A stretch of DNA of 64,000 nt from IMGVR_UViG_3300021962_000021:124001-188000, one strand, 5' to 3'; shown: positions 40,630 through 62,587, numbered from the stretch's first letter. Notes: generated by a model from the sequence alone, not told the origin. Program-made: numbers and translations.

Positions 40630-40637
40630 AAGGTTAT

Positions 40638-42086: not shown

Positions 42087-42088
42087 AA

Positions 42089-42388
42089 ATGGCAAAAATT
42101 AAGTTACAAGAAGTAGAAACTCCAGAACAAAATTTAGAATCAGTTGTATTGGAAACAAGAAAAGTTAAAGCATTGGAAAAGATAGCAAATTCTTTGGATG
42201 CACTTACTATTTGGTTCGAAGAAATTGATAAGAAAGAATGGGGTGAAAGATTGGCATGGTATTTGTATGAATGGCATACAATGGCTAAAGCAAATTTTAG
42301 TGGGGAAGTTCCAACAACACAGGAAGAACAACAAACTCCACCACCACCAAGAAAAGTTAGACCAAAAAAAGATATAGAAAAAGTTTAA
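42089..42388 (+). CDS. Small hypothetical protein between GT7 paralogues
   Basis: 99 aa, tight spacing, W-rich helix LTIWFEEIDKKEWGERLAWYLYEW. Confidence 0.7.
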   Translation: MAKIKLQEVETPEQNLESVVLETRKVKALEKIANSLDALTIWFEEIDKKEWGERLAWYLYEWHTMAKANFSGEVPTTQEEQQTPPPPRKVRPKKDIEKV

Positions 42389-42391
42389 TAA

Positions 42392-43822: not shown

Positions 43823-43823
43823 T

Positions 43824-45281: not shown

Positions 45282-45285
45282 AATT

Positions 45286-46701: not shown

Positions 46702-47447
46702 GTTTAAAAGTAGATAAGGATAATATATTTTTTATTTTACCTGAAAGTAGGTATTCTGTATCAAATAGAATTGATAAATGGATGGAAGAAGATTTTTCTT
46801 TACATCTATCCGCAAAAGTATTTTTAGAAGATTTGGATATTAATCAATCTTTTATGTTTGCAAGAAATGGAATGCATTCTGGGATATCGGCATTCAAAGA
46901 CCAATTTGATAATGTAAATGTTTCATTTAGTTATTGGTTTAGAACACCAAATGGAGAATCTGTTGTTAAGCAAGTATTTCATGGTTTACTTCCCGAAGAA
47001 GTTGGTGAATTTAATGAATACTCAATGATATGTGACCAGTTTGAAGATAGAAAGATAGATTGTTATTTTAATGGAAAATTGGTTGGAACCATACATTTTG
47101 GAGATGATGAAAAACAATCATATGAACATGCTTTTTATTGGTTTGGTTGTGGGAGTATGATAGGACCCGAAGAGCATAGGGGATATGGTAAGTTTGAATA
47201 CAAATTGTGTTTTCTATTAGATAAGAAATTAAAAATAGTTGAATTACAAGATATAGCAGATAACTACACAGATAAATACAGCCATACGGTTTTTAATGAT
47301 TTAAAGAAATTAAACTATGATTTTGCATTAAGACCGCATTTTGCATTTTTTTGTGATTTTAATCATCACAACCGATATAAAGTTTGGGATTTATCATTTA
47401 GCGGAAACTATCCACAATTTTATATAGAACACAATATATACTTTTAA
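46698..47447 (+). CDS. Stand-alone LamG/concanavalin-A-like domain protein
   Basis: IDCYFNGKLVG, WFGCG, terminal WDLSFSGN, like the LamG inserts of the GT7 genes. Confidence 0.45.
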   Translation: MSLKVDKDNIFFILPESRYSVSNRIDKWMEEDFSLHLSAKVFLEDLDINQSFMFARNGMHSGISAFKDQFDNVNVSFSYWFRTPNGESVVKQVFHGLLPEEVGEFNEYSMICDQFEDRKIDCYFNGKLVGTIHFGDDEKQSYEHAFYWFGCGSMIGPEEHRGYGKFEYKLCFLLDKKLKIVELQDIADNYTDKYSHTVFNDLKKLNYDFALRPHFAFFCDFNHHNRYKVWDLSFSGNYPQFYIEHNIYF

Positions 47448-47448
47448 T

Positions 47449-48420
47449 ATGAAGATTTTAATAACAGGTGGTGCCGGATATTTGGGTTCGGTTATTGTTG
47501 GTAAAATGTTAGAAGAAGGATATGATGTGGTTGTATTAGATAAATTATTATTTAATCAAACTTCGTTATTACAATATACTTCTAATTCAAAATTCAAATT
47601 TATTTACGGAGATGTTCGTAATGAGGTGTTATTGGAAAAACTATGTAATGAAGTTGATGTTATTATTCCATTAGCAGCAATTGTAGGATTTCCAGCATGT
47701 GCCGCAGACCCAAAATTAGCAAGAGAGATAAATTTTAATCAAATTGTAAATATAGTTAAATTTACAAATGGTAAAGATAAAAAAATTCTTTATCCAAATA
47801 CTAATAGTGGATATGGACTTGGGCAAGGACAAACGGAGTGTGATGAAGAATCGCCGTTGAATCCAATATCCGTTTACGGACAAACTAAATGTGAAGCTGA
47901 GAACTTTTTAAGAACATCTACGGATGCAATTATTTTCAGATTAGCAACTGTATTCGGAGTATCACCTAGAATGAGAACCGACCTATTGGTGAACGATTTT
48001 ACATATAAAGCAATTACAGACAAATACATTGTTGTGTTTGAAAAAAATTTTAAAAGAAACTATATACACATTGAAGATGTTGCAAATGTATTTCTTTTTA
48101 TGTTAAAAAATTATGATAAATATAAAAATGAAGTTTTTAATATAGGATTGAGTTCTGCAAATCTTTCAAAAAAAGAACTTTTGGAAAAAATACAATCTCA
48201 TGTAAAAGATTTTGCAATATCATATAATGATTATTACGAAGACCCGGATAAAAGAGATTATATAGTTTCCAATACAAAAGTAGAAGCTACGGGTTGGAAG
48301 CCAGAATGGGATTTGGATAGAGGAATAAAACAACTTATAATGGCATATCAAATGATTGTTCCAAAAATGGGAGCAGAATTTAGAAACGGATTTCCTTTAG
48401 GTTACGCAAATCAAACATAG
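47449..48420 (+). CDS. NAD-dependent NDP-sugar epimerase/dehydratase (extended SDR)
   Basis: TGGAGYLGS, LAAIVG, YGQTK (YxxxK), RLATVFG. Confidence 0.9.
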   Translation: MKILITGGAGYLGSVIVGKMLEEGYDVVVLDKLLFNQTSLLQYTSNSKFKFIYGDVRNEVLLEKLCNEVDVIIPLAAIVGFPACAADPKLAREINFNQIVNIVKFTNGKDKKILYPNTNSGYGLGQGQTECDEESPLNPISVYGQTKCEAENFLRTSTDAIIFRLATVFGVSPRMRTDLLVNDFTYKAITDKYIVVFEKNFKRNYIHIEDVANVFLFMLKNYDKYKNEVFNIGLSSANLSKKELLEKIQSHVKDFAISYNDYYEDPDKRDYIVSNTKVEATGWKPEWDLDRGIKQLIMAYQMIVPKMGAEFRNGFPLGYANQT

Positions 48421-48421
48421 T

Positions 48422-48967
48422 ATGAGTAATAAGTGGGATGAATTTATAGAAACACCATCTAAGAAATTTGGATATCAAGTTCCATCGTTTCAACCATCGG
48501 TGTTTAGAGAATATAGAGGTGAAATATTTACAACCTTTCATTCAGAAGAACATCCTGTAATGAGGCATATTCATTATGATAAAGAAGAAATTTCAATTCA
48601 CGGAAGATTTTCTCGTTCATACAAAGGTGTCCTAAGAGGATTACATTGGGATAAAAAGACATGGAAATTAGTTCAGGCAGTAGTAGGTGATATCTACTTA
48701 GTTGTTTTGGATATGAGAGAAACATCCGATACCTATGGTGAGTGGGAATCGTATATAATTTCAGAAAGATTGAGAAACCAGGTTTTAATTCCACCAGGAT
48801 TCGCAAACGGACACTACGCATTAACTGATTGTATGTTTCACTATAACTTATTTTACAAAGATGGTTATGTTGATGCAAACGAACAATATGTTGTGAAATG
48901 GAATGACCCGGAGTTTCAAATGGAATGGCCGACCGATAAACCTATATTACAAAAAAGAGATAGATAA
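48422..48967 (+). CDS. rmlC: dTDP-4-dehydrorhamnose 3,5-epimerase (RmlC-like cupin)
   Basis: FREYRG, SYKGVLRGLHW, KLVQAVVGDIYLVVLDMR, IPPGFANGH, KWNDP. Confidence 0.88.
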   Translation: MSNKWDEFIETPSKKFGYQVPSFQPSVFREYRGEIFTTFHSEEHPVMRHIHYDKEEISIHGRFSRSYKGVLRGLHWDKKTWKLVQAVVGDIYLVVLDMRETSDTYGEWESYIISERLRNQVLIPPGFANGHYALTDCMFHYNLFYKDGYVDANEQYVVKWNDPEFQMEWPTDKPILQKRDR

Positions 48968-49596
48968 TGATAAAAAATTTAGAACAATATTCAATAGTTA
49001 GACCTATTGAACAAACTGCAGAAACATTAATTGATTTTGAAAATCTAATAGTAAAACATTGGGAAGAAGGAAAAATTAGAGGACCTATCCATCTTTCAAA
49101 CGGAAACGAAGAACAACTAATAGAAATTTTCAGTAGAATAAAAACTACCGATTGGGTATTTTCAACTTGGCGTTCTCATTACCATGCACTATTAAAGGGA
49201 GTTTGTCCCGTTTGGATTGAAGAAGAAATTCTAAAAGGAAAATCTATTACTCTTTGTAATATTGATGAAAAGTTTTATTCATCTGCAATAGTTGGTGGGA
49301 CATTATCCATTGCATTAGGCGTCGCAATGGGAATTAAAGAAAGGGGTAGTGATGAAAAAGTATTTGTATTTATAGGTGACATGTCTTTCGAAAGTGGTAT
49401 CTTCTATGAAGTTCACAAATATTCTAGAAACTTTAATTTACCAATTGTATTTGTTGTGGAAGATAATGGCGTTTCAACATACACACCGACCGAAGCAACT
49501 TGGAATGTAAAAAGAGAAATTCCATCGGATGTTATTCATTACACTTATAAATCAAAATATCCACATTACGGAAGTGGTAAGTGGGTAGTATTTTAA
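48967..49596 (+). CDS. ThDP-dependent enzyme, short PDH E1-alpha-like subunit
   Basis: GPIHLSNGNE, STWRSHYHAL, ThDP motif GDMSFESG...VVEDN; only 209 aa. Confidence 0.85.
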   Translation: MIKNLEQYSIVRPIEQTAETLIDFENLIVKHWEEGKIRGPIHLSNGNEEQLIEIFSRIKTTDWVFSTWRSHYHALLKGVCPVWIEEEILKGKSITLCNIDEKFYSSAIVGGTLSIALGVAMGIKERGSDEKVFVFIGDMSFESGIFYEVHKYSRNFNLPIVFVVEDNGVSTYTPTEATWNVKREIPSDVIHYTYKSKYPHYGSGKWVVF

Positions 49597-49597
49597 T

Positions 49598-50803
49598 ATG
49601 CTATACCAAAACGATATACATAATTTTGATAAATTCACAAAAGATTGGGATTTAGAAACCGAATATGTTTTATTTGGTGCAAGTAAGGAATGTGTCCAAT
49701 TTATTCGTAGTATGGATATATTAATGGGAGAAGGTGTATTGAAAATAAAATACATAGTTGACCATTCTATAAAAGATAAAGATACTTTGGATAACATAAA
49801 AGAAATAAGTTCGGCATATCACGAATCAAAAGTAATTCAATCAAATAGAAATAATTTAAAGTTGGTTAATATGGATGAATATGATTTCAATCTAAATCAA
49901 CAAATTATTATTACAACCGATGTATTTAAAAACAAATACAAAAAGTTATTGGATGAAAAAAATATAAAGTGGACTTGGTATAAACACATTGCTTCCATTT
50001 GGCCTTTCAAACATAAAAACAAAACTCATATATTTCAAACGGATGTATTGGTGACTGAAAAATGCACATTAAATTGTTCTCATTGTAATATGTTCATGCC
50101 ACATTTTGAAACACCAATTCATAGAGAAGTTGATACAATAAAGAACGATATTGATTCATTTTTTAATAAAGTGGATTATGTTAGTGTGTTTCATTTGGTA
50201 GGTGGAGAGCCATTTTTATATCCAAATATTGAAGATGTAGTTAGATATGTTATTACAAACTACATTCATAAAATTGATAAATTAATAATTACAACCAACG
50301 GAACAATTTTACCAAAAGATAGCATGCTTAATTTATTAAAAGTAAATGATGTTATTTTGAGTGTAAGTGATTATACCGATAAGCTGGAAAATATAAAAAA
50401 GAAAGTCACAAAGGTATTAGAAAAATATAAAGAAGTTGGAATCAATCATTATGTTAGAAATGAAATTGAATGGTATGATTTCGGAGATTTAAGAATAAAG
50501 GGTGGTAGAACAACGGAACAATTGATAAATCATTTTGATTCATGTACAGCACCATTTAGAGGATTAAATGATGGTAAGTTTTACTATTGTCACCTAAACA
50601 CATCGGCAGTTAGAACAAACTTATTTCCATTAAACGATAATGATTATGTTGATATAAAAATAATTTCAAACGAAGAACTATTAAAGTTTGATTTGGGTTA
50701 TACTGACTTAGGATATATTACATTTTGTGATAATTGCAATGGTTGCAACACCGGAATTAAAATACCTGTAAGTTACGAAAAGCAAGGAGTTAGAGATTTA
50801 TGA
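49598..50803 (+). CDS. Radical SAM protein
   Basis: CTLNCSHC, LVGGEP, TTNGT, C-terminal C...YYC...CDNC. Confidence 0.88.
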   Translation: MLYQNDIHNFDKFTKDWDLETEYVLFGASKECVQFIRSMDILMGEGVLKIKYIVDHSIKDKDTLDNIKEISSAYHESKVIQSNRNNLKLVNMDEYDFNLNQQIIITTDVFKNKYKKLLDEKNIKWTWYKHIASIWPFKHKNKTHIFQTDVLVTEKCTLNCSHCNMFMPHFETPIHREVDTIKNDIDSFFNKVDYVSVFHLVGGEPFLYPNIEDVVRYVITNYIHKIDKLIITTNGTILPKDSMLNLLKVNDVILSVSDYTDKLENIKKKVTKVLEKYKEVGINHYVRNEIEWYDFGDLRIKGGRTTEQLINHFDSCTAPFRGLNDGKFYYCHLNTSAVRTNLFPLNDNDYVDIKIISNEELLKFDLGYTDLGYITFCDNCNGCNTGIKIPVSYEKQGVRDL

Positions 50804-51240
50804 AAGTAATAATTGATATAGATAATACACTTTGTATTAGTAATGAAAGATTTAGATTAGCAACAAAACCTGATGGAAAAATAGATTGGGATATTGCACA
50901 TAGAATAGACCTTATAGAAAAAGATAAACCAAACTGGCCAATGATTGATTTGGCAAAAAAATATAAGAAAGATGGATTCGAAGTTATTGTTTTAACAGGA
51001 AGACCAGAATCGGTTGAAAAGGTTACGGAAGAGTGGTTGGAAAAATATGGTGTAGAATATGACCAATTGATTATGAGAAATCGCAGTTCACATTTTTTAA
51101 AAGCTCCTGTTTATAAAGAGAAAGCATATAAAACTCTAATAAAATCAGATGTATTTTGTGCATATGATGATGAGGAAGAAATAATACAAATGTGGAATAG
51201 TTTGGGAATACCGGCATTTAAAGTTTATGGAATTGATTGA
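50800..51240 (+). CDS. HAD-family phosphatase (PseT phosphatase-domain-like)
   Basis: DIDNTL (motif I), LTGRP (II), K, AYDDE (IV). Confidence 0.85.
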   Translation: MKVIIDIDNTLCISNERFRLATKPDGKIDWDIAHRIDLIEKDKPNWPMIDLAKKYKKDGFEVIVLTGRPESVEKVTEEWLEKYGVEYDQLIMRNRSSHFLKAPVYKEKAYKTLIKSDVFCAYDDEEEIIQMWNSLGIPAFKVYGID

Positions 51241-52210
51241 TAAACATATAAAATTATTGTTACAACACAGAGATTTACAAAACCCAAACTCTTTTGAAGA
51301 TTTGGGTTATAATTTTTTTGGACCAATCGTTTTTAATTTTTTTGATTGGTTGCGAAAAGAATTAGATGGTTGTGATTTGGTTTTATTTAATTCCAGAGAA
51401 GGATATTTTTTTATAAAAATATATGAATTGTTTAAAGAAAAGTATAATTTACCAAAATACGAATATTTTAAAACATCAAGAAAATTATCAACTATTGCAT
51501 CTTTAAAAACGGAACAAGATATATACGATACATTTAAACTACACCGATATTCTGGCAATTTAAATGGTTTATTGAAGAATAGATTTGGAATAGATATTGA
51601 GGATAATTTTGATATTGATACATCTAAAGAAATTCCAAATTTAAGTAAATATGTTAATGATATTTTGAACAACGCGAAAAGAGTTAGAAGTGAGTATGGA
51701 AAGTATGTAAAGGATGTTATAGGTAATTCTAAAAATGTAATTATGGTTGATAGTGGATTTCAGGGAACAACACAATACAATATTCAAAACACATTTGCAG
51801 TAGAGCTTAAAGGTAGATATATAACATACAAAGGAAATTTACCATTAAAAGATACAAAAGGTTTTTGTGAATTTTATAAAGCGAATTTTAAAGATAACAT
51901 AATATTTTTTGAAAGCGTTTTTACTGATAAAATTGGCACATATATTGATATTACTGATAATAAATTTGTAAATGAAAATATCGAAGTTTTATTTTTTGAT
52001 GAAAAAGAAAAAATTGTAAATGGAGTATTACAATTTATAAAAGATGTATTTGATTTACAAATGGATTACGAAATATCTTATGAATACCCTGATTATATTT
52101 TTGATTTAATGTGTAAGACTGGTTATATAAAAAATGATATATTATTTGATATTTTTTTGCACGATAATTATTATGTAAGAGATAGTATTAAAAAAGTTAA
52201 TAGAATATAA
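51227..52210 (+). CDS. Putative glycan phosphoribosyltransferase (gPRT-like)
   Basis: LGYNFFGPIVFNFFDWL, LFNSREG, YFKTSRK, PRPP-loop-like MVDSGFQGTTQ, FESVF. Confidence 0.6.
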   Translation: MELIDKHIKLLLQHRDLQNPNSFEDLGYNFFGPIVFNFFDWLRKELDGCDLVLFNSREGYFFIKIYELFKEKYNLPKYEYFKTSRKLSTIASLKTEQDIYDTFKLHRYSGNLNGLLKNRFGIDIEDNFDIDTSKEIPNLSKYVNDILNNAKRVRSEYGKYVKDVIGNSKNVIMVDSGFQGTTQYNIQNTFAVELKGRYITYKGNLPLKDTKGFCEFYKANFKDNIIFFESVFTDKIGTYIDITDNKFVNENIEVLFFDEKEKIVNGVLQFIKDVFDLQMDYEISYEYPDYIFDLMCKTGYIKNDILFDIFLHDNYYVRDSIKKVNRI

Positions 52211-52211
52211 T

Positions 52212-53639
52212 ATGGAACATATGCATGGTTCTAAATTTAAATTAGTTTATACCGATTGGTATATACAGAGTGGTGAAAGAAAACCATTTGGTAATGGAAT
52301 TCATCCTGCAATAAGACAATTTATTCAATATGTTCATAGAAATAATTTGAATATAGATTATTATAGAATGTTACAATATGAACAAGAACAAAAAGGAATT
52401 CCATTTGACCATTCGGAATTATTAAATTATTTTGCAAGAAATTTTGAAAATAATATTATCAACATTACACAGATAGAAGATGATGAATATACATACATTT
52501 ATCCTTTAGAAATAAAAGCGACATTAAGTTATCTAACCGCAGAGAATAAATTTTTTTTAAATGATGTAAATTATGTTTGGAAACTAAAAGATATTATTCC
52601 AACGGAAATGATTGAATATTTTAAATCGGGAAAAGTAAAAATTTTAGTAAACATAATACACGACCCATTATATGATGATTACAATATAAGGGAGTTTGAA
52701 TTAGAAATGAACAAATTGGGTATAAATGGGTCTAATATTATTGTGTTAGGTGGTAGCGAATTTACAGAATATTATCAAAAACATCCACATAGTAAAGTAA
52801 AAATTTATAATGGCCATTTATTTATAAAGGGATATGCGGATATGATGAAAAAATTTCCAGAAAAGGGAGATTTAGGATATATTTGTGATTTGGCAAGAAT
52901 AGAAGATTTATCTGAAAATGCGATAAGACCTTACAAATTTTTGTGTAATAATAAAACAATGTCTAAACCACATAGAGTTGCAATGGCCTATTTTTCAATA
53001 AAATATGATTTACTATCGGAAGGGTTATTTTCTTTTATACAAAAATTATCAAAGGATGAATTATTGAGAAATGTTACATCTTTAATAGATAATCCAAATA
53101 AAGAATATATTGATACGATAGAATCAATGATACCATATGAATTGGATACACAAAATTTGGAAGAAAGACAAAAAGCACATTTCGGAGCAAAAAACAATAT
53201 GAAAGAATGGTATACGGATACATATATAAATTTAGTTACCGAAACTTTTTTTGGTAGAAATGTATTCTTATCGGAAAAAATATTTAAACCATTATCTAAT
53301 TTACAACCATTTATTGTATTAGGTGATTATGGAACATTGGCAGAATTAAAAAGATTAGGATTCAAAACATTTGAACCATTTATTGATGAGAGTTATGATT
53401 TAGAAATTGAAAGAAAAAAGAGAATTAAAAAAATTGAAATTGAAATTGAAAAATTAAAAAATAAATCAATAGAAGAAATACACAATTGGTATTATTCTAT
53501 AAAAGAAATACTTATACATAATCAGAATCATTTGTATACATTTGATAAATACGAATGTTTTGAAGAAATATTTCAAAAAATAAAATTAGATTACGAAAAA
53601 GAAAAGTTATGGAATTCTCAGGAAAAAAAGTTATTGTAA
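52212..53639 (+). CDS. Hypothetical protein, ET..SEK..KP family (possibly GT10-like glycosyltransferase)
   Basis: INLVTET..FLSEKIFKPLSNLQPFIVLG..LKRLGFKTF..IDESYD. Confidence 0.5.
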   Translation: MEHMHGSKFKLVYTDWYIQSGERKPFGNGIHPAIRQFIQYVHRNNLNIDYYRMLQYEQEQKGIPFDHSELLNYFARNFENNIINITQIEDDEYTYIYPLEIKATLSYLTAENKFFLNDVNYVWKLKDIIPTEMIEYFKSGKVKILVNIIHDPLYDDYNIREFELEMNKLGINGSNIIVLGGSEFTEYYQKHPHSKVKIYNGHLFIKGYADMMKKFPEKGDLGYICDLARIEDLSENAIRPYKFLCNNKTMSKPHRVAMAYFSIKYDLLSEGLFSFIQKLSKDELLRNVTSLIDNPNKEYIDTIESMIPYELDTQNLEERQKAHFGAKNNMKEWYTDTYINLVTETFFGRNVFLSEKIFKPLSNLQPFIVLGDYGTLAELKRLGFKTFEPFIDESYDLEIERKKRIKKIEIEIEKLKNKSIEEIHNWYYSIKEILIHNQNHLYTFDKYECFEEIFQKIKLDYEKEKLWNSQEKKLL

Positions 53640-54607
53640 CCGGAGCAAACGGATTGGTCGGATTACCAGCAGTTAAAAAATGTTTAGAAGAAGGTGCTGC
53701 AAAAGTATACGCAGTTGACCTTAGATTTAGTGAAAATTTAAACTTTCTAAAAGGACAGCATCCTGATAGATTGGTATTAATTAAAACGGATTTAACTTAT
53801 CTTTCTCATTGTGAAGATTTATTCACTATGGATAAGATTGATATTGTATTACATATCGCGGGTGTAAAAGGTTCACCGGCTCGTTCATCAACGCAACCAG
53901 CAGATTACCTATTCCCAATGTTGATGTTCAATACTAATATGATTAAAGCATCATTTGATGCAAAGGTAGATTGGTTTGTATATCTTTCATCGGTTGGTGT
54001 ATATAAGCCGGCAGAAGTAATGAATGAAGAAGATACTTGGAATCAGGAAGAAACTTGGGCATCAACTCCATCTCGTTTAGATTGGCATCCAGGTTGGACA
54101 AAAAGAATGGGTGAATTAACATTGGATTCTTTAAGAGTTCAATATGGTTGGAAAAATTGGACAGTAATTAGACCTTCAAACATATATGGTATTAATGATA
54201 ACTTTGCACAAGATGCAACGGTGATTAGTTCTAATATTTGGAAATTATTTAATGTAGAGGGTGAGGAAATGGTATGTTGGGGTAATGGTTCTTCTCGTAG
54301 AGATTTCGTATTTGGTGATGATGTTGCACAAGCTACAATTGATGTAGTTAAAAAGGAAGTTAGTGATATTATCAACTTTGGATGTGCAGAAGCAGTAACT
54401 ATTAAAGAAACAATTGAAACTATTGTAGAATGTTATAAAGAATTAACAGGAGAAACCAAAACTATTGTATGGGATGAAACCAAAACAAATGGTGACCCAA
54501 TTAGATGTTTAGGTTCTAAAAAACAAAAACAATATAGTATTCTTCCACAAACATCATTAAAGGAAGGTATTATGAAATCTATTAAAGAATATAAGAGTAG
54601 ATTATAA
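53609..54607 (+). CDS. GDP-fucose-synthase-like extended SDR with non-canonical active site
   Basis: TGANGLVG, RPSNIYG, WGNGSSRRDF; YxxxK is replaced by PGWTK. Confidence 0.8.
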   Translation: MEFSGKKVIVTGANGLVGLPAVKKCLEEGAAKVYAVDLRFSENLNFLKGQHPDRLVLIKTDLTYLSHCEDLFTMDKIDIVLHIAGVKGSPARSSTQPADYLFPMLMFNTNMIKASFDAKVDWFVYLSSVGVYKPAEVMNEEDTWNQEETWASTPSRLDWHPGWTKRMGELTLDSLRVQYGWKNWTVIRPSNIYGINDNFAQDATVISSNIWKLFNVEGEEMVCWGNGSSRRDFVFGDDVAQATIDVVKKEVSDIINFGCAEAVTIKETIETIVECYKELTGETKTIVWDETKTNGDPIRCLGSKKQKQYSILPQTSLKEGIMKSIKEYKSRL

Positions 54608-55290
54608 TGGAAATGTATGCATTTGGTTGCTCCTTTACGGATGGCGTTGGGTTGCAAAATAATAAAACAGAAGCATATCCCATATTATTGGGTAAAAAGT
54701 TGGGATTAAATGTTTATAATATGGGGTCTGCGGGACAATCTAATGATTATATTTTTAGAAATGTTTTTGCACATTTAAAAACTCATATAAAAAAAGATGA
54801 CATTATTTTAATTCAATGGACACATTATATAAGAAAAGAAATTCCAATACAATATAATAATAGAAATTTATATTTAGTTGCACCCAATTGTTTCAATGCA
54901 TTACAAACCGGAACAGCGGATAGTTTATCAAAAAATTGTGTAGGCCAGTATGTTAATCAAAATTTAGAAAGTGATAATGAAGAAATAAAAAAAGAGTATA
55001 AGGATTTTTATAATGAATATATTCTTAAAGCATTGCATGAGGAATATCAAATAACAACAACTGAAAATTATATAAATTCTTTATACACATATCTTGAACA
55101 TAATGGATATAAACACATTCATTTTTTTGGTTGGGATTCTTGTAAAGAACCTTTTAATTTTTATTTTAATAAAATATTAGAAGATACTTTTGGTGGATAC
55201 ACAAATACAAAAAATAATGACCATCCTGATAAAATTGGACATGAGAATTGGGCAAATTATTTAGAAGATAAAATAAAAAAAATGTTATGA
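54607..55290 (+). CDS. SGNH/GDSL-like protein
   Basis: FGCSFTDG, GSAGQSN, IQWT, DHPDKIGH. Confidence 0.65.
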   Translation: MEMYAFGCSFTDGVGLQNNKTEAYPILLGKKLGLNVYNMGSAGQSNDYIFRNVFAHLKTHIKKDDIILIQWTHYIRKEIPIQYNNRNLYLVAPNCFNALQTGTADSLSKNCVGQYVNQNLESDNEEIKKEYKDFYNEYILKALHEEYQITTTENYINSLYTYLEHNGYKHIHFFGWDSCKEPFNFYFNKILEDTFGGYTNTKNNDHPDKIGHENWANYLEDKIKKML

Positions 55291-56324
55291 AACATATAGT
55301 AGTATCGGGTTGTTCATTTACAAATAATTTTAGAATTAATATAGGAGATGAAAGGAGATGGGAAAATGACCCAATAGAAGATTGGACATGGGCAAATTGG
55401 TTACAATATAATTTACAAAAGACTCATGTTTTACACAACTATGGTGCACTAACACATGATAATAAAAGTATTGTTCGTTCTATAATTTATAAAGTTACGG
55501 ATTTATTAAAAGAAGGAATTAATCCGGAAGATATATCAGTAATTGCACAATGGACAACATTGACAAGAAATTCTTTTTTTATTACTCCCGAAAAATACGA
55601 TAGTGTAAATCCTGCATTAAGATATCAAAAGTATAATGAAAGTTGGGCTCACACCACAGATTATCTGATAAACGGTAAAGATAAAGTATCACCGTATCAG
55701 CAGGGGTATTTTCACCTAACAGGTGGATTTAATCCTACAAATAATCCAATTAATATAGACCCGGTTACATTTGAATGGTTAGATAAAGTAATGACATATA
55801 ACGAAAGATATTTTGAATGGTTTGAATATATGAACATGCTTTTAGATTTTCTTCACAATAAAGGAATTACAAAAATTAAGTTTTTTTGTATGAATAATAA
55901 TTTTAGTAAAAAATATTTAGGTGAAGGAAGAACACCACCATATTATCATACACCAAAGGAAAAATCCGTATACGAATGTATTATAGAAAATAAAGATATT
56001 TGTAATACTTGGGAACAAAAAGAATTACAATTTGAAAATGCATATGTAAAATCATATGCCGATAAAATAGATTTCAAAAAATATTTTTGGTTTTTTGAAG
56101 AAAATTCCTTACATTTGTTTGGTGGTCTAATTGAATGGTCAATTAGAAATTTTGATTACAATATGGATAGTGATTTACCAAAAGTATTGTGGAGAGAAAT
56201 GAATGGAATGGATTTAGACGAACAAAAAAAATATTTAGAAAGAAGTTGGTATGGGCACACATCATCTATACTAACTAAAAAATTTGTTAATGATGTGGTA
56301 TTAAATTGGGATATTTTAAAATAA
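55287..56324 (+). CDS. SGNH/GDSL-like protein
   Basis: SGCSFT, AQWT, C-terminal GHTS. Confidence 0.55.
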   Translation: MKHIVVSGCSFTNNFRINIGDERRWENDPIEDWTWANWLQYNLQKTHVLHNYGALTHDNKSIVRSIIYKVTDLLKEGINPEDISVIAQWTTLTRNSFFITPEKYDSVNPALRYQKYNESWAHTTDYLINGKDKVSPYQQGYFHLTGGFNPTNNPINIDPVTFEWLDKVMTYNERYFEWFEYMNMLLDFLHNKGITKIKFFCMNNNFSKKYLGEGRTPPYYHTPKEKSVYECIIENKDICNTWEQKELQFENAYVKSYADKIDFKKYFWFFEENSLHLFGGLIEWSIRNFDYNMDSDLPKVLWREMNGMDLDEQKKYLERSWYGHTSSILTKKFVNDVVLNWDILK

Positions 56325-56328
56325 ATTT

Positions 56329-57321
56329 ATGAATAAAACGGACAAGATTTTAGTTACAGGAGCAAGTGGTTTTATCGGCTCACACCTATTGAGATTATTA
56401 TGGGAAAAAGGATATAGAAACCTAAGAGCAACATCTTATAGTAGAGATTTAAAAAACGATTTCGAAGGAACATCGGAAGTTGAATTTTACAAAGGAAATT
56501 TACAAGATGCGGATTTTTGTAAAGAAGTTTCTAAAGATGTAAATGTAGTATTCCACTGCGCAGCAAACACATCAAACGCATTGGATACGAAAGAAAATCC
56601 ACTATTACATGTTACTCCAAATGTGGAAATGAATGTAAATTTAATGGAACAAAGTTGGAGAAATAGTGTAAGTAAATTCTTATTCATTTCATCTAATACT
56701 TCTTATCCTGATATGGGTAGTGATTGGTGCACAGAAGATATAAATGTTCATGCAACACCTACATTTCCAATTTATGGAGCAGTTGGTAATATGAAAAGAT
56801 ATGGTGAATTACTTTGTCATTTCTTCTCAAATCAAATTCATAACCCAATGCAATGTTTGATTGTTAGACCTTCAAATGCATTCGGACCAAACGACAAATT
56901 TGATTATGAAAAATGTCATGTTACTCCTGCAAACATCAGAAAAGTAGCAGATGGCTTAAATCCAATTCCAGTGTGGGGTGATGGAACGGAAGTTAGAGAT
57001 TTGTTGCATGTAGAAGATATGGCAGATGGTTTTATCTTTGTTGCAGAAAATAATGACAAGTATGATATATTTAATGTTTGTTATGGAGAAGGATTTAGTG
57101 TAAACGAAGTATTAAGTTGGATTAAAGAAGCAGATAACAACAATAATCCAGTTGAATATGTGAATAACAAAGCACCTATGATTCCGGTTAGATTAATGTC
57201 ATCTAAGAAAATAAACGCTGCAGGTTGGAAACCTAAGAGAGATTTAAAAACTGCTTTAAAAGAAACTATCGAATGGTATAAAGCAAATAAACATTTGTAT
57301 AATCCAAATTCAAAACCATAA
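56329..57321 (+). CDS. GDP-fucose-synthase-like extended SDR with non-canonical active site
   Basis: TGASGFIGS, RPSNAFGPNDKFD, CHVTPANIRK, WGDGTEVRD; YxxxK is replaced by VGNMK. Confidence 0.85.
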   Translation: MNKTDKILVTGASGFIGSHLLRLLWEKGYRNLRATSYSRDLKNDFEGTSEVEFYKGNLQDADFCKEVSKDVNVVFHCAANTSNALDTKENPLLHVTPNVEMNVNLMEQSWRNSVSKFLFISSNTSYPDMGSDWCTEDINVHATPTFPIYGAVGNMKRYGELLCHFFSNQIHNPMQCLIVRPSNAFGPNDKFDYEKCHVTPANIRKVADGLNPIPVWGDGTEVRDLLHVEDMADGFIFVAENNDKYDIFNVCYGEGFSVNEVLSWIKEADNNNNPVEYVNNKAPMIPVRLMSSKKINAAGWKPKRDLKTALKETIEWYKANKHLYNPNSKP

Positions 57322-57863
57322 TGAGTAAGCCAGAATTTTCACCATATAAGGATGAATTGACAAAAGCAATGAATTTTCTTTCTGAAAAAGAGGATACGGT
57401 TTTCATTGGACAGCAAATAGTTTATGCCGGAAATCCAATGTCAACTACATTGAATGATGTTCCAAAGGAAAAAATGATTGAAGTTCCTGTTATGGAAGAA
57501 ACACAAATGGGAATGAGTTTAGGACTTGCAATAACAGGTAAAACGGTAATATCATTTTATCCAAGATGGGATTTTTTAGTTTCCGCAGCAAATCAGTTAA
57601 TTAATCATGCTGATAAATTTGAACATATGACCGGTAAAAAGGTCAATGTTATTGTTAGAGTCGGTGTTGGTAGTAAAGACCCATTGGATCCAGGTATTCA
57701 GCATAGAAACGATTATACCGATGAATTCCAATCAATTCTTCAATTTACAAAAGTTCATAAATTAAAAAAAATAGAAGATATTTATAAAATATATACTGAA
57801 GCATATGAGCAAGGTGGTATTCATATAATAGTGGAATGGCCTGAATTATATTATAAAAACTAA
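57321..57863 (+). CDS. ThDP-dependent enzyme, short PDH E1-beta/transketolase pyrimidine-binding subunit
   Basis: EVPVMEETQMGMSLGLA, YPRWDFL..AANQLIN, PGIQH; only 180 aa. Confidence 0.85.
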   Translation: MSKPEFSPYKDELTKAMNFLSEKEDTVFIGQQIVYAGNPMSTTLNDVPKEKMIEVPVMEETQMGMSLGLAITGKTVISFYPRWDFLVSAANQLINHADKFEHMTGKKVNVIVRVGVGSKDPLDPGIQHRNDYTDEFQSILQFTKVHKLKKIEDIYKIYTEAYEQGGIHIIVEWPELYYKN

Positions 57864-58016: not shown

Positions 58017-61000
58017 ATGAATTTAATAAACGAAGTAGATAAACCGGAAATTAAGAAAACTGTTGTAATATTTTCAGGCAGATTTCAACCCTTTCATAGA
58101 GGACATTATGCAACATATGAGCACTTAGTGTCAAAATTTGGTGCTGCAAATGTTTACATAGGAACATCAAATGACCAATCTGGTCCAAAATCTCCGTTTG
58201 GATTTAAAGAAAAAAAGGAAATTGCAACAAAGATGTTTGGTATTCCTTCAAATAGATTTATACAAATTCGTAATCCATATCAACCGATTGAAATACTTAA
58301 AAAATTCGATGGACAAACTACGCAATATATTGCAGCAGTAGGAGAGAAAGATGCAACAAGATTGCAAGGTAAATACTTTAAACCATATAAAGGCAAAGCT
58401 GGATATGGTTATGATGAAATTGGTTATGTTTATCCGGTACCAGCAGAACAAAATCCAATAAGCGGAACGGATGTTAGAAATGCATTAGGTAGTGGGAATG
58501 ATGAAAAAGCTAAAAAGTTTTTTCTAAAAGCATATCCAAAATTTGATAAAGAAATATATAAAATGATAACAGGAAAGTTAAATGAGAATTTTATAAAAGG
58601 TTATCCATCAAAAGAAGATGTTAAAAAAATCCAAAAGAAAAATGATGATATTCGTTCAGTAGCAACTACGGATGATTCATATGTATATGACCCAATTGCA
58701 GAATTAATTGGTAGAGTGGCAGCAGAAGAGATGTTTAATGAATTTATTTTAGAATATTTGGATGAAGCACCTAATAAAGCATTAGACCAAGACATCACTT
58801 ATACAAATAGTAAAGGCCAGCAAAAGAAAATTAAAGCCAGGGATGCATTAAGATTACCAAAAGACCATCCAGCTCACGTACAAGCAGCTAAAATAGCAGG
58901 ACCGGATGATGCACCTGTGAATGAACCAAAAGCAAAAAAAGAACCAGGAAAAGCAGCTCAAAAAGCAGCAGAACCATCTCAGCCTGGTCAACCAACCAAA
59001 AAAGACCAAACCCAACAAGGAAAAATAGATAAAGAAAAATCATCTACCAGTGCACAATCTGGAAAAGAACAAGGTCCACCACCTGAACAAAAATTAAGTG
59101 GAACTGAATTAAAATCTTCAGCAGAAACTACACCTAAAGACCAAAAAGCCGAAAAAGTAAAACAAGCATTGGATGGTGCAAGAAAAGAGTTATCAAAAGA
59201 AGATAACCAAACTATTGATAAAGTAAACAACCCACAATCTCCGGAAAGAAAAGGAATGATGGGTAACATTAAAAATGGTTTAAAAAAGATTGGTGATGGA
59301 TTAGGACATTGGGCAAAGCATAAGGCAGAAATGGTCGGTGGAACGGTTGATGCAGTAAAAGCATTAGCAAATGGACAGAAAATTGGTTCTACTAAAAATA
59401 AAGAAACAGGCGAATGGGAATACTCCGATGAAAAAAGAAAAGAACAGATAAAACATATAAAACACTTTGCATTGGATGCTGGATTGTTAATAGGTTCTAT
59501 GGCATTGGGTGGAGCTGGAGTTGCAGGAGTAAAAGCAGTGATGGCAGGTAAAGGAGCGGCCGCAGCGGGTTCTGCAGCATTACACGGCGCCGCTGGTGCA
59601 TTTACACATGGTGCCGTTGGATTTGGTGCACATTTGGGTAAAGATATTGCAAAACACGCCGCATTGGAAACATTAGGATTGGGAGGAGTTAGCGCAGCAG
59701 GTGGTGGAGCAGCGTTATCCATAGCAACGGGTGGGATATTGGAAATGATTAATGAAGAAATTGATGATAACAACAAATTTATATCAAACTTTATGAGAAA
59801 GGTTGTCGAAAAAATGGAAACATATCAACTTTCCGATGAACAACTACTCAAATCTATTGAAAATTATAAGAAAAATAAACCAAAACAAGATGCAGCCGAT
59901 TTGTTAAGAGAAAACCTTTCAGAAACAAAACAACAATCAATTCAACATTTTGTAGAGTTTGCAACTAAAAGATTAAAATTACAAGAAACACCAAAAGTTA
60001 ATTTAGTAGGTGGTGGAGAATTTGCAGAAATAAAAACCAGTTTAGGGGGATTTGACCCTGAAACAAAAGAAATATATGTTGCAACCGAAGGAAGATTAAC
60101 GGCGGATATTTTAAGAACTCTTGCACATGAAATGGTTCACAGAAAGCAAGATGAAATGGGATTGGTTAGAAATCCTATGAAAGATGGTGCAGATGGTTCT
60201 CCAATAGAAAACCAGGCGCATGCAGTTGCGGGTATTCTAATGAGGGAATATGGTAGAATTAACAAACAAATATATCAAGAAGGAAAAAACTCACCGGCAT
60301 ATAAAGGACCGGAAGGATACGATGATAGTTGCGATTGTTATCCAAATGAAGATATTAACTTAGATGTTGATAAGGGTGATACTTTATTGATGGGAAAGTT
60401 TAAAAACAAAAAAGTTACAGTAAAAGATATTGGTGTAGATGACCACGGAATGCCAACAATCAATGGTAAGCAAGCAACTACATTTCGTAAAGTAGATGAA
60501 ATGGGCAGTAAGGATATTCATTTTAAAAATATTTTAGATAAACTAAAAAACGGAAACTATACAACAAGAAAGAAGATAGCAATGGCAATTGTCGGTAAGT
60601 ATAATGCAAGTAGAGATACCATTGTAAGAGCTTTGCGTAATATGGGATATGATGATATTACAAATGTTGAAAAGCAAGCCGGAATAGAATTAAATGAAAA
60701 TTTATTATTAGAAGGTGGTGCATATGGACACATGTCGCATCCATTTGATGATATGGATTTAACATTTGGTGACCTTAAAAATATAATTACAGGAGCACTG
60801 AATGGTGATTTGGGTGTAGTAAGAGAGAAAACCGATGGACAAGCATTAGCTATCAGTTGGAAGAATGGTAGATTGATTGCAGCAAGAAACAAAGGACATT
60901 TAGCAAATGCTGGAGCAAATGCTATGGGTATTGAAGATGTTGCATCAAAGTTTGCCGGAAGAGGTGGATTAACCGATGCATACAATTTCGCAATGAGAGA

Positions 61001-62585: not shown

Positions 62586-62587
62586 TT

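What the first reader, a model, noticed from the sequence alone, without database searches (positions are those of the whole stretch)
47449..57863. Truncated PDH-E1 alpha and beta among NDP-sugar enzymes: likely two-carbon-branched sugar pathway
Seen: a 209-aa E1-alpha-like gene directly after rmlC and an SDR, and a 180-aa E1-beta-like gene 7.7 kb later directly after another SDR. No E2/E3 is present in the window, and both subunits are much shorter than respiratory E1 chains. Known: E1-like pairs such as AviB1/AviB2 (avilamycin eurekanate), and the ThDP enzyme YerE (yersiniose A), transfer a pyruvate-derived C2 unit onto NDP-4-keto sugars. Inference: the phage makes a rare branched octose rather than boosting host pyruvate metabolism.
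Basis: partly seen in the sequence, partly recalled or inferred. Interest (0 to 1): 0.72.

Follow-up and report, generated by a model that had tools for sequence, protein, structure and literature searches.

The report
Phage mini-E1 enzyme for branched heptose
An uncultured aquatic phage carries two short genes that together form a stripped-down thiamine-dependent enzyme; they sit among enzymes that oxidise and epimerise GDP-heptose, so the pair most likely adds a two-carbon branch to a seven-carbon sugar for a phage-made glycan and has nothing to do with host pyruvate metabolism.

Summary
ORF 48967-49596 (209 aa) is an E1-alpha-like ThDP/diphosphate-binding domain. ORF 57321-57863 (180 aa) is an E1-beta-like pyrimidine-binding domain. 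The 238-kb phage genome has no E2, lipoyl or E3 gene.

The two genes are halves of one enzyme. They are fused in cyanophages S-SM2 and P-TIM68 and in many cellular genomes, and directly adjacent in 12 related phage loci. They are predicted to bind (0.83 vs 0.00 for controls), keep the ThDP motif and catalytic Glu/His, and are under purifying selection. The 7.7-kb gap is a hypervariable glycan cassette.

The family is a distinct short clade, far from canonical E1-alpha genes found in the same bacterial genomes.

The upstream SDR is a close homologue of C. jejuni Cj1427 (GDP-heptose C4-dehydrogenase). The "rmlC" is closest to GDP-4-keto-heptose epimerases. Relatives lacking the Cj1427-like gene carry a GDP-heptose 4,6-dehydratase homologue instead.

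Best reading (about 0.5): a minimal ThDP carboligase that adds a pyruvate-derived C2 unit to GDP-4-keto-heptose. That gives a branched nonose-type sugar, not an octose. No biochemistry exists for any member, and I could not compare it with AviB1/B2.

The parts
47449..48420 (+). SDR1: Cj1427-like NAD-dependent C4-dehydrogenase of a GDP-heptose. It makes the 4-keto sugar without 6-deoxygenation.
   Evidence: PDB 6VO6/6VO8, E 2e-106. The model matches the Cj1427 entries at Z 42 and 52% identity; the next hits are Z 35 at about 22% identity. It has T118-N119-S120, Y143 and K147 and lacks the Asp-Glu pair of 4,6-dehydratases. A copy at 50% identity or more is present in 61 of 80 related phage loci.
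48422..48967 (+). RmlC-like cupin, probably a GDP-4-keto-heptose 3,5- (or 3-) epimerase
   Evidence: PF00908, E 4e-32. The best PDB hits are C. jejuni GDP-D-glycero-4-keto-D-lyxo-heptose epimerases 8DCO, 8DB5, 8DCL and 7M14 at E about 1e-35; true dTDP RmlC scores about 1e-22. It was found in 76 of 83 loci and lies directly upstream of E1a in most of them.
48967..49596 (+). E1a: minimal E1-alpha-like subunit (ThDP diphosphate-binding PP domain only), 209 aa
   Evidence: ThDP motif G137-D138-(M)...E165-D166-N167. H42, G46, N47, E48, R69, H71, Y72, H73, G137, D138, E165 and N167 are at least 95% conserved in 113 family sequences. dN/dS is 0.07-0.16.
49598..57321 (+). Variable glycan cassette inserted between E1a and E1b. 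It holds a radical SAM (49598-50803), a small HAD phosphatase (50800-51240), a HAD-like protein (51227-52210), a GT-B-fold glycosyltransferase-like protein (52212-53639), a GDP-fucose-synthase-like SDR (53609-54607), a GDSL/SGNH protein (54607-55290), a DUF6071/SGNH-like protein (55287-56324) and an extended SDR (56329-57321).
   Evidence: Pfam and NCBIfam, Atlas leads, and a GT-B fold match for 52212-53639 (probability 0.9-1.0 but TM only 0.25-0.36). The content of this interval differs between related loci, from 0 to about 9.3 kb.
57321..57863 (+). E1b: minimal E1-beta-like subunit (ThDP pyrimidine-binding Pyr domain only), 180 aa
   Evidence: E59 (the cofactor-activating Glu), H128, R82, D84, F85, N95 and H96 are at least 95% conserved in 100 family sequences. 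It aligns with the C-terminal half of the fused cyanophage proteins. Predicted to bind E1a: 0.83 against a best control of 0.00. dN/dS is 0.08-0.43.
39763..47447 (+). Upstream glycan genes, probably part of the same system: a GT2-like gene, three paralogous GT7 + Laminin_G_3 glycosyltransferases, a twitch-domain radical SAM and an unknown 249-aa protein
   Evidence: They co-occur with the module in 20-47 of the related loci.
58017..61901 (+). 1294-aa protein with an N-terminal cytidylyltransferase-like domain; the rest is unknown. It follows E1b in several related loci.
   Evidence: PF01467, E 1.2e-4. phrog_395 cytidyltransferase, E 3e-12. Conserved downstream of E1b in L012, L038, L056, L057 and L067.

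Best explanation
E1a (PP domain) and E1b (Pyr domain) assemble into one minimal heteromeric ThDP enzyme that has lost everything an E1 needs to work with E2.

In this phage it sits in a three-step module. First, a Cj1427-like dehydrogenase oxidises C4 of a host-supplied GDP-heptose; in some relatives a GDP-heptose 4,6-dehydratase does this step. Second, an RmlC-like cupin epimerises the 4-keto sugar. Third, the ThDP enzyme decarboxylates a 2-oxo acid, most likely pyruvate, and adds the resulting hydroxyethyl-ThDP carbanion to the C4 ketone. The product would be a tertiary alcohol with a C-acetyl branch.

The SDRs of the cassette may reduce that branch. The GT-B and GT7 glycosyltransferases would then install the sugar in a phage-directed glycan.

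Shown here: the domain identities, the alpha/beta partnership, the absence of a PDH context, and the heptose-type neighbours. Inferred: the acceptor, the donor and the position of attack.
For: One enzyme:
- Fused alpha-beta proteins in S-SM2 (402 aa), P-TIM68 (381 aa) and about 15 cellular genomes align end to end with E1a plus E1b.
- E1a and E1b are directly adjacent (gap -49 to +19 bp) in 12 related phage loci. Both are present in 76 of 83 loci.
- Predicted complex: 0.83, best of 3 controls 0.00. That mark was reached by 51 of 78 solved complexes and 2 of 108 mismatched pairs. The interface lies around the ThDP motif and the catalytic Glu.
- Catalytic residues are conserved and selection is purifying.

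Not PDH:
- No E2, lipoyl or E3 gene in the genome.
- TIGR03182 scores far below its cut-off.
- The family is a separate clade from canonical E1-alpha genes of the same bacterial genomes.

Acts on a nucleotide 4-keto sugar:
- Of 80 phage loci, 60 have the Cj1427-like gene only, 11 have the heptose 4,6-dehydratase homologue only, 1 has both, and 8 have neither; most of those 8 are contigs cut upstream. Two non-orthologous ways to make the same 4-keto sugar therefore alternate beside the pair.
- The minimal loci L055, L061 and L063 hold only SDR1-RmlC-E1a-E1b. L066 holds RmlC-E1a-[heptose 4,6-dehydratase]-E1b. No C4-reductase homologue was found in them, which leaves the ThDP enzyme as the consumer of the ketone.
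- Natural fusions: DegT sugar aminotransferase + E1a + E1b (L096), and E1b + extended SDR (L100).

Precedent: E1-type pairs install C2 branches on keto sugars. KbDH-alpha/beta was assayed in vitro with pyruvate and keto-sugar analogues; there is genetic evidence for aldgamycin, avilamycin and paulomycin (PMC12247030, PMC4425429, PMC4753412).
Against: - No member of this short family has been assayed.
- Most loci, including this one, also carry GDP-fucose-synthase-like SDRs. These could reduce the 4-keto sugar as Cj1428 does, leaving the ThDP enzyme some other job.
- The second clade of the family (cellular genomes and cyanophages) sits beside ADP-heptose synthesis genes (HldE, a GmhB-like HAD, GT9), a Zn-ADH and a radical SAM/SPASM, not beside Cj1427/RmlC homologues. 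This also allows chain building, or attack on another carbonyl.
- The alpha subunit lacks the C-terminal half of E1-alpha. From established knowledge of E1 structures, that half carries an active-site His loop.
- The phage encodes no GmhA, PfkB kinase or sugar nucleotidyltransferase. GDP-heptose must come from a host that is unknown.
- Sequence comparison with AviB1/B2, Pau11/12 and KbDH was not possible.
- The complex score may partly reflect the model's memory of solved E1 structures.
Confidence: 0.5

Rival explanations
1. Same carboligase chemistry but a different acceptor carbonyl or donor. The acceptor could be an aldehyde or ketone made elsewhere on the nucleotide-heptose by the Zn-ADH or radical SAM partners, giving linear chain extension or a C3 branch. 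The donor could be a 2-oxo acid other than pyruvate.
For: In the cellular/cyanophage clade the conserved neighbours are a Zn-ADH directly upstream (15 loci) and a radical SAM/SPASM (17 loci), not a Cj1427-like SDR. Known E1-type branchers act at C3 or C4 (PMC12247030). YerE-like enzymes use donors from C3 to C8 (PMC9306805).
Against: In the phage clade that holds this window, the constant partners are 4-keto-forming enzymes and a 4-keto-sugar epimerase. Known E1-type sugar branchers appear restricted to C2 donors (PMC12247030).
Confidence: 0.2
2. A transketolase- or DXS-like chain-building enzyme that makes a ketose phosphate (sedoheptulose-7-P or a higher or deoxy analogue) to feed the heptose-nucleotide pathway.
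For: E1a also matches the DXP_synthase_N and transketolase models weakly. The cellular clade lies next to HldE, a GmhB-like HAD and GT9. S-SM2 and P-TIM68 have GmhA, kinase and nucleotidyltransferase genes nearby.
Against: This phage has no GmhA, PfkB kinase or sugar nucleotidyltransferase, yet it keeps the pair. The pair is fused to NDP-sugar enzymes (DegT, extended SDR), not to sugar-phosphate enzymes. The best family matches are 2-oxo-acid-decarboxylating E1s, not transketolase.
Confidence: 0.12
3. A plain 2-oxo-acid decarboxylase supplying an aldehyde, or via an ADH an alcohol, for a non-sugar substituent of the glycan.
For: A Zn-ADH lies directly beside the fused form in many genomes. Minimal two-domain ThDP decarboxylases exist, for example sulfopyruvate and phosphonopyruvate decarboxylases (own knowledge).
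Against: The genome has no PEP mutase. The domain order and the best matches are E1-type, not ComDE/Ppd-type. This reading does not explain the strict linkage to 4-keto-sugar-forming and 4-keto-sugar-epimerising enzymes.
Confidence: 0.1
4. Decaying remnants of host pdhA/pdhB, or an auxiliary metabolic gene that boosts host pyruvate oxidation.
For: Public annotations call close homologues 'pyruvate dehydrogenase E1 component alpha subunit'.
Against: dN/dS is 0.07-0.43, and the lengths of about 209 and 180 aa are kept across more than 100 sequences. The genome has no E2 or E3. The clade is separate from canonical E1-alpha. The domains that contact E2 are missing. The pair always lies inside glycan clusters.
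Confidence: 0.02

Closest known systems
E1-type ('alpha-KADH2') sugar C2-branching pairs: AviB1/AviB2 (avilamycin), Pau11/Pau12 (paulomycin), the aldgamycin pair, KbDH-alpha/beta (kibdelomycin)
   Same: Separate alpha (PP) and beta (Pyr) ThDP subunits without E2 or E3, encoded inside a nucleotide-sugar cluster next to enzymes that make keto sugars. The proposed chemistry is the same: a pyruvate-derived C2 unit added to a sugar ketone.
   Different: Those subunits are full length (Pau11 325 aa, Pau12 345 aa; PMC4425429) and come from actinomycete antibiotic clusters acting on dTDP-deoxyhexoses or already attached sugars. Here the subunits are 209 and 180 aa, single-domain, sometimes fused in alpha-beta order. 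They occur in phages, DPANN archaea, CPR and other bacteria, and sit next to GDP- or ADP-heptose enzymes. The sequence relationship was not tested.
YerE / ErwE family (yersiniose A, erwiniose)
   Same: ThDP-dependent acyl branching at C4 of a nucleotide 4-keto sugar in surface-glycan clusters, followed by a reductase (PMC9306805).
   Different: YerE is a single-chain enzyme of the decarboxylase (acetolactate-synthase-like) superfamily acting on CDP-3,6-dideoxy-4-keto-glucose. It is not homologous at family level to the E1-type pair here.
Heterotetrameric E1 of pyruvate, branched-chain 2-oxo acid and acetoin dehydrogenase complexes
   Same: Best sequence matches. Same ThDP motif, cofactor-activating Glu and beta-subunit His. 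Alpha/beta interface predicted at the cofactor site.
   Different: Lacks the C-terminal half of alpha and the C-terminal domain of beta. No E2 or E3 partner. Scores far below the equivalog cut-offs. Forms a separate clade, and canonical E1-alpha genes coexist with the short form in the same genomes.
Campylobacter jejuni capsular heptose modification pathways (Cj1427 C4-dehydrogenase or GDP-heptose 4,6-dehydratase; Cj1430-type epimerases; Cj1428-type C4-reductases; PMC10680097, PMC7949155)
   Same: SDR1 is about 52-60% identical to Cj1427. The cupin is closest to the heptose 3,5-/3-epimerases. Relatives carry a homologue of the heptose 4,6-dehydratase 7US5 (E 1.6e-108). GDP-fucose-synthase-like SDRs are present.
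   Different: As far as the literature I searched shows, no ThDP enzyme is known in the C. jejuni pathways. Here the E1-like pair is the constant extra member, and in minimal loci it stands where the C4-reductase would be.
Cyanophage 'transketolase central region-containing protein' (S-SM2 SSM2_198 / ADO97531; P-TIM68 AIR93527)
   Same: Homologous over the full length of E1a plus E1b (about 40% and 31-33% identity), and located in a phage glycan cluster.
   Different: Fused into one chain. Belongs to the other clade of the family. Neighbours are a Zn-ADH, a PfkB-like kinase, GmhA and nucleotidyltransferases, not Cj1427/RmlC homologues. Annotated only; no function has been assigned.

Membership tests
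ThDP-dependent enzyme, E1-type alpha subunit (Pfam E1_dh PF00676) | Score above the curated Pfam gathering threshold | tested here: met
   61.5 bits against a cut-off of 22, E 8.6e-17. Only profile positions 3-174 of 300 are covered.
ThDP-dependent enzyme, E1-type alpha subunit | ThDP/Mg2+-binding motif GDG-x(25-30)-N(N) | tested here: met
   G137-D138-M...E165-D166-N167 in the window. G137, D138, E165 and N167 are at least 95% conserved in 113 family sequences.
ThDP-dependent enzyme, E1-beta / transketolase Pyr domain (Pfam PF02779) | Score above the curated Pfam gathering threshold | tested here: inconclusive
   The window copy scores 22.0 bits, below the cut-off of 27. The homologue in L005 scores 28.1 bits. 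NF006667 gives E 4.7e-9 and BCKDH E1-beta gives E 1.2e-6.
ThDP-dependent enzyme, E1-beta / Pyr domain | Conserved Glu that activates the cofactor's aminopyrimidine | tested here: met
   E59 aligns with the Glu of BCKDH E1-beta and is at least 95% conserved, as is H128.
Heteromeric E1 (alpha plus beta form one active site) | The two chains bind each other | tested here: met
   Computational only. Complex score 0.83 against a best control of 0.00. Natural alpha-beta fusions and adjacent gene pairs.
Pyruvate dehydrogenase complex E1 (TIGR03182/TIGR03181, NF006667 equivalogs) | Score above the curated equivalog cut-off | tested here: not met
   85.5 against 393.85; 52.7 against 411.35; beta 35.6 against 321.
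Pyruvate dehydrogenase complex E1 | E2 (lipoyl acyltransferase) and E3 partners encoded with it | tested here: not met
   No PF00198, PF00364 or PF07992 match in the complete 238-kb genome.
Pyruvate dehydrogenase complex E1 | Full-length alpha (about 320-370 aa) and a beta with the C-terminal domain | tested here: not met
   209 and 180 aa. Canonical copies in the same bacterial genomes cover profile positions 2-299 in ORFs of about 368-397 aa.
Pyruvate dehydrogenase complex E1 | Groups with canonical E1-alpha in a tree | tested here: not met
   The short family (113 rows) is split from 5 canonical E1-alpha by a branch of length 3.07, SH-aLRT 100. This is the quick IQ-TREE run; the careful search did not finish.
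E1-type sugar C2-branching enzymes (AviB1/B2, Pau11/12, KbDH) | An E1-like alpha/beta pair without E2/E3 inside a nucleotide-sugar cluster, beside keto-sugar-forming enzymes | tested here: met
E1-type sugar C2-branching enzymes (AviB1/B2, Pau11/12, KbDH) | Sequence clustering with AviB1 (AAK83190), AviB2 (AAK83191) and their homologues | not tested
   No tool gave me these sequences. Only their lengths and accession numbers come from PMC4425429.
E1-type sugar C2-branching enzymes (AviB1/B2, Pau11/12, KbDH) | Full-length E1 subunit architecture | tested here: not met
   Pau11 325 aa and Pau12 345 aa (PMC4425429), against 209 and 180 aa here.
E1-type sugar C2-branching enzymes (AviB1/B2, Pau11/12, KbDH) | Pyruvate-dependent transfer of a C2 unit to a sugar ketone | not testable with these tools
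   Needs an enzyme assay.
C. jejuni-type GDP-heptose modification module | A Cj1427-type C4-dehydrogenase or a GDP-heptose 4,6-dehydratase, plus a cupin 3/5-epimerase | tested here: met
   SDR1 against 6VO6, E 2e-106, Z 42. The cupin against 8DCO and 7M14, E about 1e-35. The alternative dehydratase against 7US5, E 1.6e-108.
C. jejuni-type GDP-heptose modification module | [quoted passage not shown] | not testable with these tools
   Inferred from homology only. The phage encodes no GmhA, PfkB kinase or nucleotidyltransferase.

The most novel reading that the evidence does not exclude
A widespread, uncharacterised family of minimal two-domain E1-like ThDP carboligases (split or fused; in aquatic phages, cyanophages, DPANN archaea, CPR and other bacteria) makes C-branched or chain-extended heptoses. 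These would be nine-carbon sugars of a type not yet described in any glycan. In this phage lineage the two halves of the enzyme also serve as conserved anchors flanking a swappable cassette, which diversifies a phage-directed glycan that is probably attached to soluble (virion?) proteins.
Probability: 0.3. Interest if true: 0.78.

Novelty: new variant of a known kind. Interest (0 to 1): 0.62.

Why it matters
If the reading is right, it matters in four ways.
- It extends ThDP-dependent sugar branching from actinomycete antibiotics and a few O-antigens to phages, DPANN archaea and CPR bacteria.
- It defines the smallest known E1-type catalytic unit (about 390 residues per active-site pair), which is of interest for biocatalysis of tertiary alcohols.
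- It predicts a new class of branched heptose-derived sugars.
- It corrects a recurrent metagenome annotation. Close homologues are named 'pyruvate dehydrogenase E1 alpha', which could be counted as a central-carbon auxiliary metabolic gene in aquatic viromes.

The cassette between the two halves also gives a concrete model for how phages vary a glycan.

Tried and rejected
- Phosphonate pathway (a phosphonopyruvate-decarboxylase-like two-domain ThDP enzyme plus a cytidylyltransferase). Rejected: the genome has no PEP mutase, and the domain order and matches are E1-type.
- A conserved alpha/radical-SAM partnership. The huge phage LR756501 has beta-rSAM-alpha, and the window has alpha followed by a rSAM. 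The two rSAMs are only generically related, and the window's rSAM-HAD-u327 block occurs in only 12 of 80 loci. It is not a core partner in this clade.
- Near-identical DNA in cultured phages: none found. The closest cultured phages by baseplate wedge are Microcystis phage Mel-JY01 (42.6%) and Flavobacterium phage immuto (40%). The host stays unknown.
- Literature searches for a characterised short E1-like enzyme in heptose or phage glycan clusters found nothing. Two Cj1427 papers could not be read, and a search for the PDB codes was useless. The identity of 6VO6/6VO8 was settled from the entry titles instead.
- PHROG scans of the large neighbouring proteins gave nothing useful.
- Transcription evidence. 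Three riverine metatranscriptome libraries hold a few 150-213-nt contigs identical or nearly identical to SDR1, RmlC and E1a. Such libraries can contain DNA, so this does not show expression.

Full report
**Setting.** The window is bases 124001-188000 of a 238,219-bp IMG/VR virus record that CheckV rates 100% complete. GC content is about 30% and every long ORF is on the + strand. It is a tailed phage: there are baseplate-wedge and SbcCD-like PHROG matches. The closest cultured relatives by baseplate wedge are Microcystis phage Mel-JY01 (42.6%) and Flavobacterium phage immuto (40%). Near-identical DNA occurs in many independent marine, estuary, river, lake and other freshwater metagenomes from 2018-2025.

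The gene order is SDR (47449-48420), RmlC-like (48422-48967), E1-alpha-like (48967-49596, 209 aa), eight genes, SDR (56329-57321), then E1-beta-like (57321-57863, 180 aa).
- The alpha protein passes the Pfam E1_dh threshold but covers only profile positions 3-174 of 300.
- The beta protein matches the Pyr domain of E1-beta. Its Pfam score is just under the cut-off, but NCBIfam gives E 4.7e-9 and BCKDH-beta gives E 1.2e-6. It is too short to hold the C-terminal domain.
- No E2, lipoyl domain or E3 is encoded anywhere in the genome.

**The two genes are halves of one enzyme.**
- Cyanophages S-SM2 and P-TIM68 encode single proteins of 402 and 381 aa, annotated 'transketolase central region-containing protein'. 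These align end to end with E1a followed by E1b.
- In 80 related IMG/VR loci plus three phage records, E1b accompanies E1a in 76 of 83. In 12 loci the two are directly adjacent (gap -49 to +19 bp). Elsewhere they are separated by 1-9 kb of variable content. The 7.7-kb gap in the window is therefore an inserted cassette.
- In 41 loci from species-representative cellular genomes the pair is adjacent or fused into a protein of about 400 aa. These genomes include Woesearchaeota and Pacearchaeota, CPR, Omnitrophota, Planctomycetota, Verrucomicrobiota, Nitrospirota, a Methanosarcinales contig of 969 kb, and Prochlorococcus single-cell assemblies.
- A complex prediction scored 0.83 in all three runs, against 0.00 for the best of 3 controls. 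That mark was reached by 51 of 78 solved complexes and 2 of 108 mismatched pairs. The interface lies around the ThDP motif of alpha and the catalytic-Glu loop of beta. The score may partly reflect the model's memory of solved E1 structures.
- Across 113 alpha and 100 beta sequences, the ThDP motif (G137, D138 ... E165, N167), several His/Arg/Tyr residues of alpha, and E59 and H128 of beta are at least 95% conserved.
- dN/dS against eight relatives is 0.07-0.16 for alpha and 0.08-0.43 for beta, similar to the neighbouring SDR and cupin. dS is near saturation, so the values are rough.
- These are working genes, not decaying fragments.

**It is a distinct short family, not PDH.**
- A search of 1.84 billion cluster representatives gave 108 hits at E <= 1e-30, nearly all about 200 aa or fused forms, and 2,894 at E <= 1e-3.
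- The 90%-identity database holds 6,440 matches. The best 120 are all 209-210 aa, and several carry the name 'pyruvate dehydrogenase E1 component alpha subunit'.
- Five bacterial genomes that carry the short form also carry canonical full-length E1-alpha genes, with E 1e-50 to 1e-97 and profile coverage 2-299.
- In a quick maximum-likelihood tree the 113 short sequences are separated from five canonical ones by a branch of length 3.07 with SH-aLRT 100. The careful search did not finish.
- Inside the family there are two clades, each with support 99. One has 71 phage rows, including the window, plus 10 cellular rows, nearly all with split genes. The other has cellular genomes, S-SM2, P-TIM68 and a 735-kb phage, and holds all but one of the fused forms.

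**What the neighbours really are.**
- The SDR at 47449 is not a 4,6-dehydratase. Its best solved relative is 6VO6/6VO8 at E 2e-106. A model of it matches those entries at Z 42 and 52% identity, against Z 35 and about 22% identity for the next hits. [quoted passage not shown]
- Cj1427 oxidises C4 of GDP-heptose, using alpha-ketoglutarate to re-oxidise its bound NADH (PMC10680097).
- The window protein has T-N-S where dehydratases have T-D/S-E.
- The 'rmlC' is closer to the C. jejuni GDP-4-keto-heptose 3,5- and 3-epimerases (E about 1e-35) than to dTDP RmlC (about 1e-22).
- The two other SDRs resemble GDP-fucose synthase and C4-reductases.

**The key comparative result.** Related phage loci that lack the Cj1427-like gene carry a 4,6-dehydratase instead. 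[quoted passage not shown]

| Content of the 80 phage loci | Loci |
|---|---|
| Cj1427-like gene only | 60 |
| Heptose 4,6-dehydratase homologue only | 11 |
| Both | 1 |
| Neither (mostly contigs cut upstream) | 8 |

Two non-orthologous ways of making a GDP-4-keto-heptose thus alternate next to the same cupin-E1a-E1b core. Some loci are minimal. L055, L061 and L063 hold only SDR1-RmlC-E1a-E1b. L066 holds RmlC-E1a-[dehydratase]-E1b. No C4-reductase homologue was found in any of them. Natural fusions point the same way: a DegT-family sugar aminotransferase fused to E1a-E1b in a Woesearchaeota genome, and E1b fused to an extended SDR in another.

**Mechanism proposed.** In a rhamnose- or Cj1428-type pathway the 4-keto group ends up reduced. 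Here I propose that the minimal ThDP enzyme captures it. The enzyme would decarboxylate a 2-oxo acid, pyruvate by analogy, and add the hydroxyethyl-ThDP carbanion to C4. The product would be a tertiary alcohol with an acetyl branch, which cassette SDRs might reduce. This is the chemistry assigned to E1-type pairs in avilamycin, paulomycin and aldgamycin. It was shown in vitro for KbDH-alpha/beta with pyruvate and keto-sugar analogues (PMC12247030, PMC4425429, PMC4753412). It is also the YerE/YerF logic (PMC9306805). With a heptose as acceptor the product would have nine carbons, not eight.

**Caveats and rivals.**
- Most loci also have reductase-like SDRs that could consume the ketone.
- The other clade of the family lies next to ADP-heptose synthesis genes (HldE, a GmhB-like HAD, GT9 heptosyltransferases), a Zn-ADH and a radical SAM/SPASM. 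That keeps open a different acceptor carbonyl, or a transketolase/DXS-like chain-building role.
- This phage has no GmhA, PfkB kinase or sugar nucleotidyltransferase, which argues against the chain-building role here.
- A phosphonate-type decarboxylase reading was dropped because there is no PEP mutase.
The known homologues are full length (325 and 345 aa), so this is at least a different architecture.

**Rest of the cluster.**
- The cassette's most frequent gene (52212-53639) models confidently (pLDDT 88). It matches GT-B glycosyltransferases such as the protein O-glycosyltransferases SdgB and GtfA, with probability 0.9-1.0 but TM only 0.25-0.36, so this is a fold-level lead only.
- The other unknowns look HAD-like and SGNH-like.
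- Upstream lie three paralogous GT7 + Laminin_G_3 glycosyltransferases, a GT2-like gene and a twitch radical SAM.
- A crude hydropathy scan of the 26 proteins from 30741 to 63244 found only isolated weak hydrophobic windows, in five proteins, and nothing resembling a multi-spanning protein. Nothing like a flippase, polymerase or polyprenyl-phosphate transferase is therefore evident. This hints at glycosylation of soluble proteins rather than an exported polysaccharide.

**Verdict.** This is a new variant of a known kind and of moderate to high interest.

Noticed in passing
window 49598-57321; loci L006-L085: The interval between E1a and E1b is hypervariable among related phages, from 0 to about 9.3 kb with different mixes of GT-B-like genes, SDRs, SGNH-like genes and rSAM-HAD blocks. 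E1b identity to the window tends to follow cassette type (81-87% in L016, L017, L019 and L024, which share the rSAM block, against 61-68% in L007, L010 and L012 and in L014, which also has the block). E1a stays at 77-88% in the same loci. This suggests recombination inside the cassette with the two half-genes as anchors.
   Followed up: partly
proteins P0134, P0135 (homologues of E1a): Two E1a homologues are interrupted by mobile elements. P0135 holds an intein splicing/Hint domain after residue about 121, near the ThDP motif. P0134 holds a LAGLIDADG_3 domain.
   Followed up: no
L022:8692-9435 and its homologues in 13 other viral loci: In the L020/L022/L025/L026/L027 group a PhyH-family Fe(II)/2-oxoglutarate dioxygenase lies directly upstream of RmlC-E1a-E1b. 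Its position in the other loci was not checked. In avilamycin the E1-like pair AviB1/B2 works together with the non-haem iron enzyme AviO2 (PMC4425429). The parallel is untested.
   Followed up: no
L022:10623-12380: In this relative E1b is the N-terminal 180 aa of a 585-aa protein whose C-terminal 400 aa have no Pfam match. A NodU-type carbamoyltransferase follows it. The window has a related carbamoyltransferase far upstream at 5099-6793.
   Followed up: no
window 40638-45281: Three tandem paralogues combine a eukaryote-type GT7 (beta-1,4-galactosyltransferase-like) domain with a Laminin_G_3 lectin-like domain. This combination is unusual for a phage.
   Followed up: no
window 30741-63244: A hydropathy scan of the 26 proteins in and around the glycan cluster found only isolated weak hydrophobic windows, in five proteins (SDR1, E1a, the 1294-aa protein and the 218-aa protein), and nothing resembling a multi-spanning membrane protein. 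No Wzx/Wzy/WaaL-like component is evident, which hints at glycosylation of soluble, possibly virion, proteins.
   Followed up: partly
window 58017-61901: This 1294-aa protein has only an N-terminal cytidylyltransferase-like domain recognisable. With the two small ORFs after it (61914-63244), it is conserved downstream of E1b in several relatives.
   Followed up: no
window 26562-29711: A single 1049-aa ORF combines SbcD-like (residues 5-323) and SbcC-like (321-1048) nuclease subunits, which are usually two genes.
   Followed up: no
L109, L110, L119 (Prochlorococcus single-cell assemblies): The fused E1ab of these SAG contigs groups with that of cyanophage P-TIM68 (support 98). Whether the contigs are host islands or co-sorted phage DNA was not examined.
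   Followed up: no
window 48247-49339: Riverine metatranscriptome libraries contain a few 150-213-nt contigs identical or nearly identical to the SDR1 3' end, the RmlC start and E1a. This is suggestive only, because DNA carry-over is not excluded.
   Followed up: partly
window 45286-46701: A twitch-domain radical SAM protein matches NF033640 strongly (E 1.5e-105). It is present in 47 of the related loci upstream of the SDR1-RmlC-E1a core. Its role is unknown.
   Followed up: no
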